From Obrimoposthia wandeli (taxonomy: Eukaryota): a stretch of 64,000 nt of DNA. The DNA is taken from positions 62,001 to 126,000 of the forward strand of contig CDROCS010005705.1 in the NCBI GenBank assembly GCA_977020255.1, written 5' to 3'. The notes beneath the pieces were generated by a model. That model did no database searches. It saw only the letters and a program-made list of their open reading frames with translations, and was not told where the DNA came from. Every line of letters starts with the position of its first letter. The first letter of the stretch is position 1. A program made the position numbers and the translations under genes. Shown piece after piece: positions 9,487 to 34,818 of this stretch.

Positions 9487-10181
9487 TGGCTAAGCTAACT
9501 AAACGTTTTAAAGCGATTAATGAAAAGCTAGTAGCTGGTAAGGCTTATGCTATCGATGATGCGGTTGCTCTTCTTGCTGATGTCTCTGCAGTTAAATTTA
9601 AAGAATCTATCGAAATTGCAGTTAACTTGGGTGTAGACCCACGTAAATCTGACCAGGTTGTTCGTGGATCAACTGTAATGCCTTCAGGTACTGGTAAAGA
9701 TGTACGTGTTGCTGTTTTCGCTCAAGGCGAAAATGCTGAAAAAGCTAAAGCAGCTGGCGCAGATATCGTAGGTTTTGAAGACCTAGGTGAAGCAATTAAA
9801 GGCGGCGAAATGAACTTCGACGTAGTTATTGCAACTCCAGATGCAATGCGTGTTGTAGGTCAGTTAGGTCAGATATTAGGCCCACGTGGTTTAATGCCTA
9901 ACCCTAAAGTTGGTACAGTTACACCTGATGTTGTTACTGCTATCAAGAACGCTAAAGCTGGTCAAGTACGTTTTCGTACTGACAAAAATGGCATCATCCA
10001 TGCAGGTATCGGTAAAGTCGATTTCACAGCAGATGCTATTAAGACAAACATTGAAGCATTGGTTGCTGAAGTTAAGAAACTTAAACCTGCTTCTGCTAAG
10101 GGTGTTTACCTTAAGAAAATTATCTTGTCCTCTACAATGGGTCCAGGTCTTTTGATTGATCAAACGTCTTTAGATATTTAA
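9486..10181 (+). CDS. rplA: 50S ribosomal protein L1
   Basis: [29 protein letters not shown]. Confidence 0.99.
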
Positions 10182-31333: not shown

Positions 31334-32608
31334 ATGGACGGTTTTTTAATAAGCTTGATCAGCCTAGCGGTAACGGCACTATTTGTGATTGGTGTACCTA
31401 TTTTTTTAGTCATATCACTTTGGGTGGTAGGCGTAAGTTTAGTGATTGATTTTACTTTAGCGAATGTAGGCGTAACTTTACATGAAGGCTTAAGCTTTTA
31501 CGGGTTATTAGCGTTGCCACTGTTTATCTTAACGGGAGATTTAATCAATGCTGCCGGTATTGCAAAACGATTATCAGATTTTGCCTACAGCTGCTTAAGC
31601 TGGTTGCACGGTGGTTTAGGTATGGCGTCACTAGGTGCATGTGGCATGTTTGCTGCCATTTCAGGATCCAACTCGGCCACTACCGCTACCATTGGCGGTA
31701 TTATGCACCCTGAAATGGTCAAGGGGAATTACGATAGTAAGTTTGCAGCAGCGACCATCGCAGCCGGTGGCACCGTAGGGATTATTATTCCGCCGAGTAT
31801 CATCTTTATTGTGTATGGTTTCATGATGAATTTGCCTATCGGCGACCTATTCATGGCGGGACTTATTCCTGGTGTGCTTATGGTTATTGCGATGCAATTG
31901 GTTTGTTATTTTATTTGTCGTAAAAATAAATGGGGTATATTACAGCCGTTTAAACTTAAAAAAGCCGCCAAGGCTGGCATGCGTGCTTGGTTGGGTTTTT
32001 TAGCGATAGGCATTGTGCTGTGGGGGATATATTCAGGTGCGTTCTCTCCAACCGAAGCGGCTGGTATTACTACCGGTTTCTGCTTGTTAGCGGGGGTATT
32101 AGTGACTCGGGAGATTAAGATCTCGGCAATTCCTGCAATTATGATGCGCTCAGGTCAAATTACGGGTATGTTAGCGCCGCTGATTGCAATCTCTATTGTA
32201 ATGCAGCAGGTGTTGTCACTATTAGGCGCCAAGGAATTTATTACTGATGTGATAAATATGCTCGGTGGTTATTATCCGATATTGTTTGCCTGCCTATTAT
32301 TAGTTTTAATTGCGGGCACTGTCTTAGAAAGCTTGCCGAATACTATTATTTTAGCGCCTATTTTAGCGCCTATTGCAGCAAGCATTGGAGTTGATCCTAT
32401 TCATTTTGCGGTATTGTTCTTGATAGGGGATGCGATTGGTTTTATCACTCCGCCTTACGGACTTAATCTCTATGTCGCAAGTAGTATGACAGGGATTCCC
32501 TATTTGCAATTAGTTCGCTCAACCCTTCCTTATCTATATGCGCTATTGGCAACTTGGATGTTAGTTGCTTATTTCCCTGCACTGAGTTTATGGATGCTAT
32601 CTTTTTAA
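31334..32608 (+). CDS. TRAP large permease (DctM)
   Basis: AISGSNSAT, IIPPSI, ITPPYGLNLYV; SD AAGGAG before ATG 31334. Confidence 0.93.
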   Translation: MDGFLISLISLAVTALFVIGVPIFLVISLWVVGVSLVIDFTLANVGVTLHEGLSFYGLLALPLFILTGDLINAAGIAKRLSDFAYSCLSWLHGGLGMASLGACGMFAAISGSNSATTATIGGIMHPEMVKGNYDSKFAAATIAAGGTVGIIIPPSIIFIVYGFMMNLPIGDLFMAGLIPGVLMVIAMQLVCYFICRKNKWGILQPFKLKKAAKAGMRAWLGFLAIGIVLWGIYSGAFSPTEAAGITTGFCLLAGVLVTREIKISAIPAIMMRSGQITGMLAPLIAISIVMQQVLSLLGAKEFITDVINMLGGYYPILFACLLLVLIAGTVLESLPNTIILAPILAPIAASIGVDPIHFAVLFLIGDAIGFITPPYGLNLYVASSMTGIPYLQLVRSTLPYLYALLATWMLVAYFPALSLWMLSF

Positions 32609-33192
32609 ATACGCAAACTAGCCTTTCATATGAGAGGCTTTTAAGCTTATATAATTTAAATGTTATTGAAAAATACGATTTTTCTATCAACGTATAACCT
32701 TAATTCGCTATTTACCAAAAGTACTGATGTATGCGGCTGACTCATTTTTCAAGATCTATTGAAAATAGTTAGTTGCATTGTTAACCAGCGGTTATGTATT
32801 ACTAGCTTTGAGCAATTGTTAGCATTGTGTTAATAACTACTTTGCACCTACTGTGAAATAGATTCTTTTACTTGTAATTACTTATGTAACTTAAACAGCC
32901 AATTATTAATCATTGCAGCTGAGCCAGTCATGCTGATATTGAGTGAATATGCGGGTATATCTTATGGTTCGATCAATATTGCATAGGCTATAACAGTGCG
33001 TAGCGTATGACTAAATAACACTTAAGAAACTATTAAATTGCAGGTTTTTAACAATGTTGCTAGAACAGAGCATTACGCATGCATTAATTTGGCGAAGTAT
33101 AAGTTCTGTAATCGCCCATTGGAAAAGCCTGATCGCTATAAATGACGACTATAGTAGCAAGTAAGTTTTAAGCCGTTAGGTTAAGAAAATTT

Positions 33193-33318
33193 AAAAAAAG
33201 GGGCTACCCAAGATGGGTAGCCAAAAATGACAAGAACCGTGTACTCATATTAACCAGAATGTAGTTAATAAGAGAGGTGAAGATAACTTAATGATAGAAA
33301 TTGAGTTATCTTGCGAGC
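33193..33318 (-). ncRNA. Candidate Fur-regulated PrrF/RyhB-like small RNA (~125 nt)
   Basis: Minus-strand promoter with embedded Fur box, 5' hairpin, CU-rich anti-SD seed, terminator GGCTACCCA-TCT-TGGGTAGCC plus T7; no ORF. Confidence 0.6.
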
Positions 33319-33324
33319 TAAATA

Positions 33325-33353
33325 ATAGTAATGCAATTGAGAATGATTAGCAA
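33325..33353 (-). promoter_or_regulatory. Sigma70 promoter overlapping a Fur box
   Basis: TTGCTA-17bp-TACTAT on the minus strand; plus strand reads GCAATTGAGAATGATTAGCAAT. Confidence 0.65.
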
Positions 33354-34077
33354 TAGTATTTGATTGTAAATTCTGAATGTTGTTATCCCATTTTAGCTAT
33401 ATGCCATTGAGCCTGCTAGGCATCGTTTATCAACCATAGAGATACTGGTTGCTGCTTCCTATTCGCTAGGTAGACTTATTGGATAGCTAATCAGGATTGG
33501 TGGAATGACTTAAATTCTAGCCTTATCTAGTGTTGTGATGAAATCAGTGATGAGTGATTAATGCTAAATTTTTAAAGACTATTAAGCATGGAGTGCACAG
33601 GAAAAATGAATATCTGCGTTATTTACTTCGCGGATTTAAACTCAAAACCCATCACTGTTTAAACCACTAGCGCAGCACTAAGTTCAGGCACTCAATCATC
33701 TGGCAGTCTAAAAGACCTAGTTTTCAGGTCAAGTATTCAACCTTTTCCCGTATCGCTGCACCGTTATTTGTATTGTCAGGTGTGCCAACTAGCTGCTGGC
33801 TGGGTGTTTTGCCAACAATTGAATCGCTAGCGTTGCTGTTGTTGTTTTTGGCTTTGCCAATTGCACTACTAGTGTTGAGCAGCAAGAATGCAGCTAGGCA
33901 ATCTATTGCTTAATACCAAAAGTATGTAAGTGATTATGAATGACTTTATAGGGCGTTGATATCGTTGGTGCGTGTAATGAGTTTGGTGATTAATTAGCTT
34001 ATGAATTGTAACTGATTGTTCTTTAAGATTAGCAGGTCTAAAATGAATGGCTTCAGCGTAGCCTAAGTGAATAATTT

Positions 34078-34791
34078 ATGTCAGTGACTCAGCCTGTTTA
34101 CCTGCAATTACGTCGTCAATTGCTGTTGTGGATTAACGAAAAGAAATTAGCTAGCCAAGAGAAGCTCCCTGCCGAACGCGAGTTAGCGACACTGTTTAGT
34201 ACAACGCGTGTCACATTGCGACAGGCATTATCCCAATTGGAAGCAGAAGGCGTTATCTATCGATCAAATCGGCGTGGTTGGTTTGTTACTCCCAGTCGCC
34301 TAGAGTATGACCCAAGTCGTGATGTTGGATTTAATATTTACGTAAAATCCCAAGGCTTTGTGCCGCGTACAGAAACTATCATCAAATCTTTGATTGAGAC
34401 TCCTGCTTGGTTAGCTAAAAAGTGTAGCTTAGTAGAAGGCGATCCAATTTATCATTTTGTTAGGCGTCGCTATGTGGATGAGCGCGCTCTGCTTATTGAG
34501 CACAACTTTATAAATGCAGCTAGCTGTACTGACTTACTCGCTAAAGATACAGATGATTCGCTGTGGAAATTACTTGACAGTGAATATCAACTACGGCCGA
34601 CAAAACGCAAGATCGAAATATATCCACAGGCAATAATTGCTGATGAAGCACAGTGGTTAAATGTAAATACAGGCAGTGCAGGGCTTTATCTTGAGCGTAT
34701 TAGTTATGCGCAGCAGGGCCAGTTTCTAGAATTTGATCAAGAGTACTGGTTGCATGATGCTTTAAAATTGGTAGTTAATGTTAAAGATTAA
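34078..34791 (+). CDS. GntR/HutC (UTRA) regulator, PhnR-like
   Basis: KLPAERELA..F.TTRVTLRQAL...RRGWFV HTH plus UTRA domain; sits next to phnX. Confidence 0.88.
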   Translation: MSVTQPVYLQLRRQLLLWINEKKLASQEKLPAERELATLFSTTRVTLRQALSQLEAEGVIYRSNRRGWFVTPSRLEYDPSRDVGFNIYVKSQGFVPRTETIIKSLIETPAWLAKKCSLVEGDPIYHFVRRRYVDERALLIEHNFINAASCTDLLAKDTDDSLWKLLDSEYQLRPTKRKIEIYPQAIIADEAQWLNVNTGSAGLYLERISYAQQGQFLEFDQEYWLHDALKLVVNVKD

Positions 34792-34806
34792 ATAATATTT
34801 TTAAAT

Positions 34807-34818
34807 TGGTATATACCA
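34807..34818. promoter_or_regulatory. PhnR/PhnF-type operator
   Basis: Perfect palindrome TGGTATATACCA upstream of HAD-phnX. Confidence 0.7.

What the first reader, a model, noticed from the sequence alone, without database searches (positions are those of the whole stretch)
33193..33353. Unannotated Fur-controlled sRNA of PrrF type
Seen on the minus strand: TTGCTA-17-TACTAT with a Fur-box-like sequence (AATTGAGAATGATTAGCAA on the plus strand) filling the spacer; a 5' hairpin AGATAACTCAAT/ATTAAGTTATCT; an unpaired CU-rich TCTTCACCTCTCTT able to pair with SD sequences; CACGGTTCTTG; then a 9-bp GC stem plus T7. There is no ORF. Recalled knowledge: Pseudomonas PrrF has this architecture, with TTATCTCCTC and CACGGTTTTTG segments. 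Inference: an iron-sparing sRNA, possibly undescribed for this lineage.
Basis: partly seen in the sequence, partly recalled or inferred. Interest (0 to 1): 0.7.

Follow-up and report, generated by a model that had tools for sequence, protein, structure and literature searches.

The report
Fur-box small RNA, PrrF-like
This is a real, conserved 126-base non-coding RNA gene in a marine Nitrincola-like bacterium; its promoter carries a binding site for the iron sensor Fur, so it is very probably this lineage's undescribed counterpart of the Pseudomonas iron-starvation RNA PrrF, and its likeliest target is the succinate dehydrogenase mRNA.

Summary

**Real gene.** A covariance model built here finds 37 copies: the window, three other bacterial contigs of this assembly, and 18 of 121 sampled genomes of the GTDB family that holds Nitrincola. 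Many genomes hold more than one, some in tandem. Compensatory changes occur in 17 of 20 modelled base pairs.

**Fur control.** All 37 promoters keep a Fur-box-like operator at one fixed place between -35 and -10. Its core is the reverse complement of the PrrF promoter box.

**Relation to PrrF.** Rfam's PrrF, RyhB and all other families miss it. It still shares PrrF's layout and short motifs in the same order. I read it as a new variant of the PrrF kind, not a member of RF00444.

- Half of the "unpaired CU-rich tract" is an arm of a conserved middle hairpin.
- The likelier seed is the invariant 18-mer ACACGGTTCTTGTCATTT.
- sodB is not found in five relatives.

**Target.** Against 2,065 start regions of a relative, the seed ranks sdhC third, covering its GUG start. 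With the window's own RNA type the pairing is weaker (about rank 44).

Expression and iron response could not be tested; no RNA runs exist. The scan had already noted two sister loci in this genome.

The parts
33348..33353 (-). -35 hexamer TTGCTA
   Evidence: TTGcnA (TTGAT in the more divergent copies) is conserved at this place across the 37 family promoters.
33331..33357 (-). Fur-box-like operator over the -35 hexamer and the 17-nt spacer (core AATCATTCTCAAT, 33336-33348)
   Evidence: It matches the 19-bp Fur consensus at 14 of 19 (33339-33357). The family range is 12-16 of 19, always at the same place. The family core AATCATTCTCATT is the reverse complement of AATGAGAATGATT in PrrF promoters; the window differs from it at one base. 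The background rate for 14 or more matches is 0.6% of 75-nt windows.
33325..33330 (-). -10 hexamer TACTAT
   Evidence: TAnTAT is conserved in the family, 17 nt after the -35.
33193..33318 (-). sRNA gene, 126 nt, from the predicted start G (33318) to the end of the T-run
   Evidence: Model R1 scores it 124.8 bits, E 1.7e-25. The fold z-score is -5.4. The first nine bases GCTCGCAAG are identical in the 11 sequences the model was built from.
33280..33312 (-). Hairpin 1 (5' stem-loop)
   Evidence: 12 modelled pairs. All 9 pairs of the inner helix show compensatory changes across 37 copies.
33277..33282 (-). CTTCAC: the end of hairpin 1 plus a short conserved linker
   Evidence: CTTCA is nearly invariant in the family. 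Mean unpaired probability is 0.58.
33244..33274 (-). Hairpin 2 (middle stem-loop); its 5' arm is the CU-rich tract
   Evidence: 33 of 37 copies fold a stable hairpin here from unrelated sequences, with z between -2.2 and -6.8. Three of the other four were extracted from the wrong anchor and one folds only weakly.
33225..33242 (-). Invariant single-stranded core ACACGGTTCTTGTCATTT, the proposed seed and Hfq module
   Evidence: It is identical in the 11 seed sequences and nearly so in all 37. Median unpaired probability is 0.75, against a whole-RNA mean of 0.42. It is complementary to the sdhC start region.
33193..33222 (-). Intrinsic terminator: 9-bp stem, 3-nt loop, T7
   Evidence: Found by the terminator scan. 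All 8 modelled pairs show compensatory changes and 99% of cells are paired.

Best explanation
The locus is a stand-alone gene for a trans-acting small RNA of about 126 nt.

Shown by sequence and comparison:
- a sigma-70 promoter with an operator that fits the Fur consensus across the -35 hexamer and the spacer;
- a structure of 5' hairpin, short CUUCAC linker, variable middle hairpin, an invariant accessible 18-mer, and an intrinsic terminator with a U-tail;
- conservation in a clade of Nitrincola-like Gammaproteobacteria, often in several copies per genome.

Inferred:
- With enough iron, Fe-Fur sits on the operator and blocks RNA polymerase.
- Under iron shortage the RNA is made and is bound by Hfq through the U-rich stretch, terminator and U-tail.
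- It then pairs through CACGGUUC(UUGU) with the translation start region of sdhC, covering its GUG start codon. This lowers synthesis of the haem- and Fe-S-rich succinate dehydrogenase.
- Lineage-specific pairing by the linker region may add other respiratory or TCA-cycle mRNAs (nqrA and acnB in one relative).

In function it is the PrrF/RyhB-type iron-sparing regulator of this lineage. It is probably a much-diverged relative of PrrF.
For: **Real RNA gene**
- Six copies in this assembly at 73-100% identity.
- Five more among 185,579 species genomes, all Oceanospirillales/Nitrincola-type MAGs, plus two chance hits.
- Model R1 finds it in 18 of 121 sampled family genomes, with 1-4 copies each, several in tandem.
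- 95% of pair cells are standard pairs, 17 of 20 pairs have compensatory changes, and 0 of 500 shuffles reach this; slid controls fall to 23-54% paired.
- A third, unmodelled hairpin is conserved in structure but not in sequence.

**Independent transcription unit**
- It lies antisense to both flanking operons, a TRAP transporter dctPQM and a GntR regulator with HAD hydrolases.
- No gene follows it on its own strand.
- Family copies sit in at least three unrelated syntenic contexts.

**Fur control**
- The operator sits at a fixed position in all 37 promoters, with 12-16 of 19 matches to the consensus.
- The spacer is conserved, although sigma-70 spacers normally are not.
- Its core equals the PrrF promoter box in reverse orientation.
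- In relative G164 the best consensus Fur site in 2.4 Mb (17 of 19) lies 52 nt before a TonB-dependent receptor gene, so the consensus applies in this lineage.
- fur and hfq are present in four family genomes that carry the RNA.
- RyhB and PrrF genes are likewise directly preceded by a Fur site (PMC7377471).

**PrrF-like organisation**
- R1 run without filters puts its best weak hits (E 0.005-3.4) on the PrrF gene itself in 12 of 14 PrrF loci.
- 8 of 19 PrrF-like bodies, with terminators removed, beat at least 99% of their shuffles; about 0.2 are expected by chance.

**Target**
- In G164 the core ranks sdhC third of 2,065 start regions: -21.9 kcal/mol, site -14 to +3. None of 2,000 shuffled cores reaches this.
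- The sdhC site is present in all 17 sRNA-bearing genomes checked and exactly in G000:C2027.
- sdhC is cited as a confirmed target of RyhB and PrrF (PMC7377471).
Against: - No expression data: no RNA run holds the locus, so the transcript, its ends and its iron response are unobserved.
- The window's own Fur-box score (14 of 19) is only moderate.
- Rfam's PrrF model does not see the RNA even at E up to 10.
- For the window's RNA subtype the sdhC duplex is weaker: 8 + 4 bp, -17.1 kcal/mol, about rank 44 of 2,065 in a surrogate background.
- The sdhC start region is just as conserved in 17 of 20 family genomes where R1 finds no sRNA. There is therefore no co-variation between RNA and site, and the site may be conserved for other reasons.
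- The other top-ranked candidates in G164 look like noise or wrongly called starts.
- Target ranking used home-made gene calls, 67% of one genome, and duplex energies without accessibility.
- It cannot be shown that C2027, which carries sdhC, belongs to the same bacterium as the window contig.
- sodB, the classic target, is not found in relatives.
Confidence: 0.75

Rival explanations
1. It is a real sRNA, but its operator is bound by a different AT-rich-box repressor, such as another Fur-family member (Zur, Mur or Irr-like) or an unrelated regulator. It would then answer to a signal other than iron.
For: The genomes hold 2-3 Fur-family paralogues each. The window's box matches the Fur consensus at only 14 of 19. 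No binding or expression data exist.
Against: The operator core is the same 13-mer, in reverse, as in promoters of bona fide PrrF genes. More divergent family members drift towards the classical Fur consensus, not away from it, for example TTGATAATGATTCTC at 15-16 of 19. The predicted target, sdhC, fits an iron regulon.
Confidence: 0.1
2. It is a Fur-controlled sRNA whose conserved 18-mer serves mainly as a protein-binding or stability module (Hfq, RNase E) or pairs with targets not examined here. The complementarity to sdhC would then be coincidental, and the regulon is not of the classical iron-sparing type.
For: The U-rich stretch just before a terminator is a typical Hfq module (established knowledge). 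The sdhC site is equally conserved where R1 finds no sRNA. Pairing is only moderate for the window's subtype. A search for longer complements of the 18-mer found nothing beyond the control level.
Against: Sequence invariance over 18 nt exceeds what Hfq binding needs. Rank 3 of 2,065, exactly over the start codon of a classic target, is not expected by chance; 0 of 2,000 shuffled cores reach it. PrrF keeps the same CACGGUU motif.
Confidence: 0.12
3. It is not a functional sRNA: a promoter-like sequence and a hairpin arose by chance, or it is a decaying remnant, a cis-acting leader or a small-protein gene.
For: There is no expression evidence. A 14-codon ATG frame overlaps the core in the window copy.
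Against: 37 copies show compensatory changes in three helices. The promoter and operator are conserved. No gene lies downstream on the same strand. The short frame is not conserved.
Confidence: 0.03

Closest known systems
PrrF1/PrrF2 of Pseudomonas (Rfam RF00444), with ArrF-type and other PrrF-like RNAs of the same order
   Same: - A Fur box overlaps a sigma-70 promoter, with the same AATGAGAATGATT core in reverse orientation.
- The 5' end is of G-TCGC-AG type.
- A long 5' hairpin has a 3' arm ending GTTAnCTyC.
- A conserved single-stranded CACGGTTyTT lies before a G+C-rich terminator and U-tail.
- Multiple copies are frequent, often in tandem.
- Both occur in the same GTDB order.
- sdh is a target or predicted target.
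   Different: - RF00444 gives no match, even at E up to 10.
- PrrF's ATCAGGCTAAT stretch is replaced by a variable middle hairpin.
- The conserved core is extended to ACACGGTTCTTGTCATTT.
- The window holds a single copy.
- No sodB is available as a target in relatives.
RyhB of Enterobacteria and Vibrio (RF00057)
   Same: A Fur-repressed, Hfq-type sRNA that spares iron by repressing the sdhCDAB mRNA and other mRNAs for iron proteins (PMC7377471).
   Different: There is no sequence or model similarity: no Rfam hit. Its structure and seed differ.
JA04 (RF02732), an Aggregatibacter sRNA; HrrF of Haemophilus is a known Fur-regulated sRNA in a related group
   Same: JA04 is the best, still weak, Rfam match: 28 bits, E 0.17. 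The match covers GGTTC-TT, the terminator and the U-tail.
   Different: The score is far below the gathering score of 81 bits and is driven by the terminator. I treat it as chance or generic similarity.
BrrF of Burkholderia cenocepacia
   Same: A low-iron sRNA with no similarity to RyhB or PrrF whose regulon includes sdhC, sdhA and acnA. It is a precedent for lineage-specific iron sRNAs (PMC7377471).
   Different: BrrF has no Fur box of its own and is co-expressed with hemP. It is unrelated in sequence.

Membership tests
PrrF (Rfam RF00444) | Matches the family covariance model at or above the gathering score of 90 bits | tested here: not met
   No RF00444 match in the window at gathering, nor at E up to 10 on 32500-34200. 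None at E up to 1 on 14 family loci. In five genomes that carry the RNA, only random hits with E above 1, elsewhere in the genome.
PrrF (Rfam RF00444) | Conserved single-stranded core TTATCTCCTCATCAGGCTAATCACGGTTT between the 5' hairpin and the terminator | tested here: not met
   Only GTTAnCTTCAC and CACGGTTCTT are retained, and a hairpin replaces the middle of the core. The reverse test gives weak positional hits of R1 on PrrF genes, E 0.005-3.4 in 12 of 14 loci.
PrrF (Rfam RF00444) | Fur box overlapping the promoter | tested here: met
   14 of 19 in the window and 12-16 of 19 in all 37 copies, at a fixed position. The core is shared with PrrF promoters.
PrrF (Rfam RF00444) | Two or more copies per genome, tandem in P. 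aeruginosa | tested here: inconclusive
   Tandem pairs occur on C4705 and C4550 and in G239, G202, G241, G262 and G215. The window's intergenic region holds one copy only.
Fur-repressed iron-sparing sRNAs (functional class: RyhB, PrrF, NrrF, FsrA, BrrF) | Transcript induced by iron limitation or loss of Fur | not testable with these tools
   No RNA run holds the locus.
Fur-repressed iron-sparing sRNAs (functional class: RyhB, PrrF, NrrF, FsrA, BrrF) | Base-pairs with and represses mRNAs of non-essential iron proteins such as sdh, acn, sodB and bfr | tested here: inconclusive
   In silico only. In G164, sdhC ranks 3 of 2,065, nqrA ranks 1 and acnB ranks 16 for the linker region. For the window's subtype sdhC is about rank 44. 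sodB is not found in relatives. bfr and fumA lie outside the part of the genome that could be fetched.
Fur-repressed iron-sparing sRNAs (functional class: RyhB, PrrF, NrrF, FsrA, BrrF) | Hfq-type architecture and hfq in the genome | tested here: met
   A U-rich stretch, a G+C-rich terminator and a U-tail of 7. hfq is present in G002, G003, G164 and G229. Binding itself was not tested.

The most novel reading that the evidence does not exclude
The RNA and Pseudomonas PrrF descend from one ancestral Fur-controlled sRNA. Its CACGGUU seed and the (G)AGCC-GUG start region of sdhC would form an ancient, order-wide regulator-target pair. The unusual GUG start and the conserved leader of sdhC would then be held in place by the sRNA. 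In this clade the RNA has been rebuilt around that seed, with a new middle hairpin and a seed extended to 18 nt. It may work together with a Fur-derepressed second sdh-like operon to switch succinate dehydrogenase isoforms when iron is short.
Probability: 0.25. Interest if true: 0.65.

Novelty: new variant of a known kind. Interest (0 to 1): 0.5.

Why it matters
Iron-sparing sRNAs are central to bacterial iron economy. They are described for few lineages, and almost none of those are marine, although iron limits growth in much of the ocean.

- This family gives Nitrincola-like Oceanospirillales a concrete, testable candidate. These bacteria are common in marine blooms and in animal-associated communities.
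- The candidate comes with a defined operator, a seed and a first target.
- It shows that Rfam's PrrF model and gathering score miss both this family and many divergent PrrF-like genes in the same order. Annotation pipelines therefore under-report such regulators.
- A new Rfam seed could be built directly from alignment A4.
- The lack of sodB in relatives means the regulon must differ from the textbook one.

Tried and rejected
- **Rfam.** At gathering and at E up to 10 there is no PrrF, RyhB or NrrF match. The weak JA04, MicF and ncS16 hits are driven by the terminator.
- **Long complements of the 18-mer.** A search with up to 3 mismatches in five genomes found only the sRNA genes themselves plus hits at the control level, none at start codons.
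- **sodB as a target.** No Fe/Mn SOD domain is found in G001-G005.
- **Expression.** The only holder of the locus is a DNA data set kept as contigs.
- **Whole-genome target prediction.** After that no loci could be cut. As a result bfr, fumA and the assembly's own sdhC regions were not read. I only asked whether one known 32-nt site exists in G000.
- **Co-occurrence test.** The sdhC site is as good in genomes without an R1 hit as in those with one (Mann-Whitney p = 0.16). This gives no co-evolution signal. Those genomes hold near-core strings with one mismatch (23 against 10 for the control) that I could not inspect.
- **Second copy in the spacer.** No degenerate second copy lies in the 1.47-kb intergenic region.
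- **Small protein.** The 14-codon frame is not conserved.
- **Fur-like motif at 37748-37760.** It lies inside an ORF and was dismissed.
- **Metagenome scan.** Not run; the family was already well populated.

Full report
**1. What is in the sequence**

On the minus strand of the 1.47-kb spacer between a TRAP-transporter operon (dctPQM, ending at 32608) and a GntR/HAD operon (starting at 34078), both on the plus strand, lie the following elements (coordinates):
- -35 TTGCTA at 33348-33353, a 17-nt spacer, and -10 TACTAT at 33325-33330;
- a predicted start at G 33318;
- hairpin 1 at 33280-33312 and the linker CTTCAC;
- hairpin 2 at 33244-33274;
- the single-stranded stretch ACACGGTTCTTGTCATTT at 33225-33242;
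- a 9-bp terminator stem at 33202-33222 followed by T7 to 33193.

The terminator scan finds the terminator on its own. The RNA folds at -33.4 kcal/mol with z = -5.4. No ORF of 40 aa or more overlaps it, and no gene follows on the same strand. The one exception is that about half of the "unpaired CU-rich" tract forms the 5' arm of hairpin 2.

**2. Where the window comes from**

The window is contig C5705 of a 1.35-Gb assembly with 6,912 contigs. It is therefore a bacterial contig inside a eukaryote's assembly. Its 16S rRNA gene is 97% identical to two complete MAG chromosomes, recorded as "uncultured Nitrincola sp." and "Oceanospirillales bacterium MAG-10". That places it in the GTDB family around Nitrincola, order Pseudomonadales in the GTDB sense.

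**3. It is a conserved RNA gene**

- The same assembly holds five more copies at 73-83% identity on three other contigs. Two of those contigs carry tandem pairs.
- An exact-pattern scan of one genome for each of 185,579 species returned seven loci. Five are true homologues, all Oceanospirillales or Nitrincola-type MAGs. Two are chance matches in Muribaculaceae and Thermotogota, about the number expected for a pattern of this length (my estimate).
- A covariance model (R1) built from 11 sequences found the RNA in 18 of 121 sampled genomes of that family, with 1-4 copies each.
- R1 found it in none of the other 150 genomes sampled across the order.
- On the 37-copy alignment, 95% of pair cells are standard pairs and 17 of 20 pairs show compensatory changes. 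No shuffle of 500 reaches this, and sliding the partners drops pairing to 23-54%. The alignment is fitted to the model, which favours the structure, but the margin is large.
- A middle hairpin that was not in the model is present in 33 of 37 copies, built from unrelated sequences, with z between -2.2 and -6.8.
- The 18-mer core is invariant and mostly unpaired: median unpaired probability 0.75, against a whole-RNA mean of 0.42.
- Copies sit in at least three unrelated syntenic contexts, and the window's flanks match none of them. This fits an autonomous, duplicating sRNA gene.

**4. Fur control**

- All 37 promoters read TTGcnA-17-TAnTAT, with a conserved spacer.
- The best match to the 19-bp Fur consensus falls at the same place in every copy, with 12-16 of 19 matches. 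The window has 14.
- In the window, 14 or more matches occur in 0.6% of random 75-nt windows and at six sites in 64 kb.
- The operator core AATCATTCTCATT is the reverse complement of AATGAGAATGATT in the promoters of bona fide PrrF genes found here.
- More divergent family members carry TTGATAATGATTCTC, which is closer to the classical box.
- As a calibration, the best consensus site in 2.4 Mb of relative G164 (17 of 19) lies 52 nt upstream of a TonB-dependent receptor gene.
- fur and hfq are present in four family genomes that carry the RNA.

Fur binding itself is inferred, not shown.

**5. Relation to PrrF**

- Rfam's PrrF model does not match the window or any family copy.
- In the same order, that model finds three full-score PrrF genomes and 20 more with sub-threshold hits that are plainly PrrF-like. 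One of these (G144) belongs to the Nitrincola family itself.
- Laid side by side, PrrF and the new RNA share, in the same order: the Fur-box promoter, a G-TCGC-AG 5' end, a long 5' hairpin ending GTTAnCTyC, CACGGTTyTT, and a terminator with a U-tail.
- The new RNA has a hairpin where PrrF has ATCAGGCTAAT, and a longer conserved core.
- R1 run without filters places its best weak hits (E 0.005-3.4) exactly on the PrrF gene in 12 of 14 PrrF loci.
- With terminators removed, 8 of 19 PrrF-like bodies beat at least 99% of their own shuffles against an HMM of the new family. The other 11 give no hit.

The similarity is real but short. It fits common descent, which I favour at roughly 60%. It also fits convergence on the same target site. 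I do not file the RNA as a member of RF00444.

**6. Targets**

I then called 2,066 genes with a simple ORF and Shine-Dalgarno heuristic, of which 2,065 start regions were scored, and computed duplex energies of the core and of the linker against positions -80 to +40 of each.

- The core ranks sdhC third of 2,065, at -21.9 kcal/mol. The site runs from -14 to +3 and covers the GUG start. None of 2,000 shuffled cores reaches this energy.
- The two better-scoring hits are a GDT1 cation antiporter and a wrongly called internal start in cysG. Most of the other top hits look like noise.
- The linker of the G164 RNA pairs over 18 bp with the Shine-Dalgarno and AUG of nqrA (rank 1). It ranks the acnB leader 16th. 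The linker sequence is not conserved across the family.
- The sdhC start region (…GTGTGAA…GAGCC-GTG-AA…) is present in all 17 sRNA-bearing genomes checked. It is also present in 17 of 20 family genomes where R1 finds nothing, so it gives no co-variation evidence. Several of those genomes have PrrF-like genes or near-core strings that I could not inspect.
- The same 32-nt site occurs once in this assembly, at the start of the sdhC gene on contig C2027.
- With the window's own RNA the duplex is 8 + 4 bp and -17.1 kcal/mol, about rank 44 of 2,065 in the surrogate background.
- sdhC is cited as a confirmed target of RyhB and PrrF (PMC7377471).

**7. What could not be done**

- No RNA sequencing run holds the locus, so the transcript and its iron response are untested.
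- E-values from R1 are rough by construction.

**8. Prior knowledge and verdict**

- No Rfam family covers the RNA.
- The paper library returned nothing on PrrF-like or Fur-regulated sRNAs in Oceanospirillales, Nitrincolaceae or Nitrincola.
- This scan had already flagged two sister loci in the same genome: a tandem pair and a copy downstream of aroA. I found such copies independently.

The finding is a well-supported new sRNA family of the Fur/PrrF kind. I rate it a new variant of a known kind, of moderate interest. It comes with a concrete operator, seed and first target for experiments.

Noticed in passing
G001-G005 (relatives; no window coordinates): No Fe/Mn superoxide dismutase domain (PF02777) was found in five Nitrincola-family genomes, two of them complete chromosomes, while 12 of 14 control genomes ring. 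These aerobes may rely on another SOD type.
   Followed up: no
L093 and L094 (G002, G003), upstream of a second sdhC-like gene: A paralogous sdhC-like operon has a 15-of-19 Fur-consensus site 66 nt before its ATG; the main sdhC has none. It may be a Fur-derepressed alternative succinate dehydrogenase or fumarate reductase that complements sRNA repression of the main one.
   Followed up: partly
L054-L064 (genomes of the same GTDB order): Rfam PrrF gives clearly genuine PrrF-like genes at 35-84 bits, below its 90-bit cut-off. They have Fur-box promoters, are often in tandem, and keep the ATCTCCTCATCAGGCTAATCACGG core. They occur in 20 of 151 sampled genomes, so standard annotation would miss them.
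   Followed up: partly
L221-L255, L089-L092 (sdhC start regions): The leader and GUG start of sdhC (…GTGTGAAnnnGAGCC-GTG-AAYAAAAAAAGACC) are conserved in 34 of 37 genomes of the family, far more than a typical 5' UTR.
   Followed up: partly
window 32609-33192 and 33354-34077: The rest of the unusually long 1.47-kb spacer has no ORF of 60 aa or more, no second sRNA copy and no Rfam match. It is unexplained.
   Followed up: partly
G000 contigs C5705, C4705, C4550, C2469, C2027: Several Nitrincola-family contigs, with sRNA copies only 73-83% alike, sit in one 1.35-Gb eukaryote-sized assembly. Either several related bacteria or one genome with diverged paralogues accompany the host.
   Followed up: no
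L072 (G005:C4, around 9651-9668, minus strand): A further diverged paralogue reads AGAAGGTTCTTGTCATTT followed by a terminator. It has lost the CACGG part of the core.
   Followed up: no
window 34078-36565: A GntR/UTRA regulator is followed by two HAD-type hydrolases. This is the neighbouring operon that another note of this scan reads as a phosphonatase cluster.
   Followed up: no
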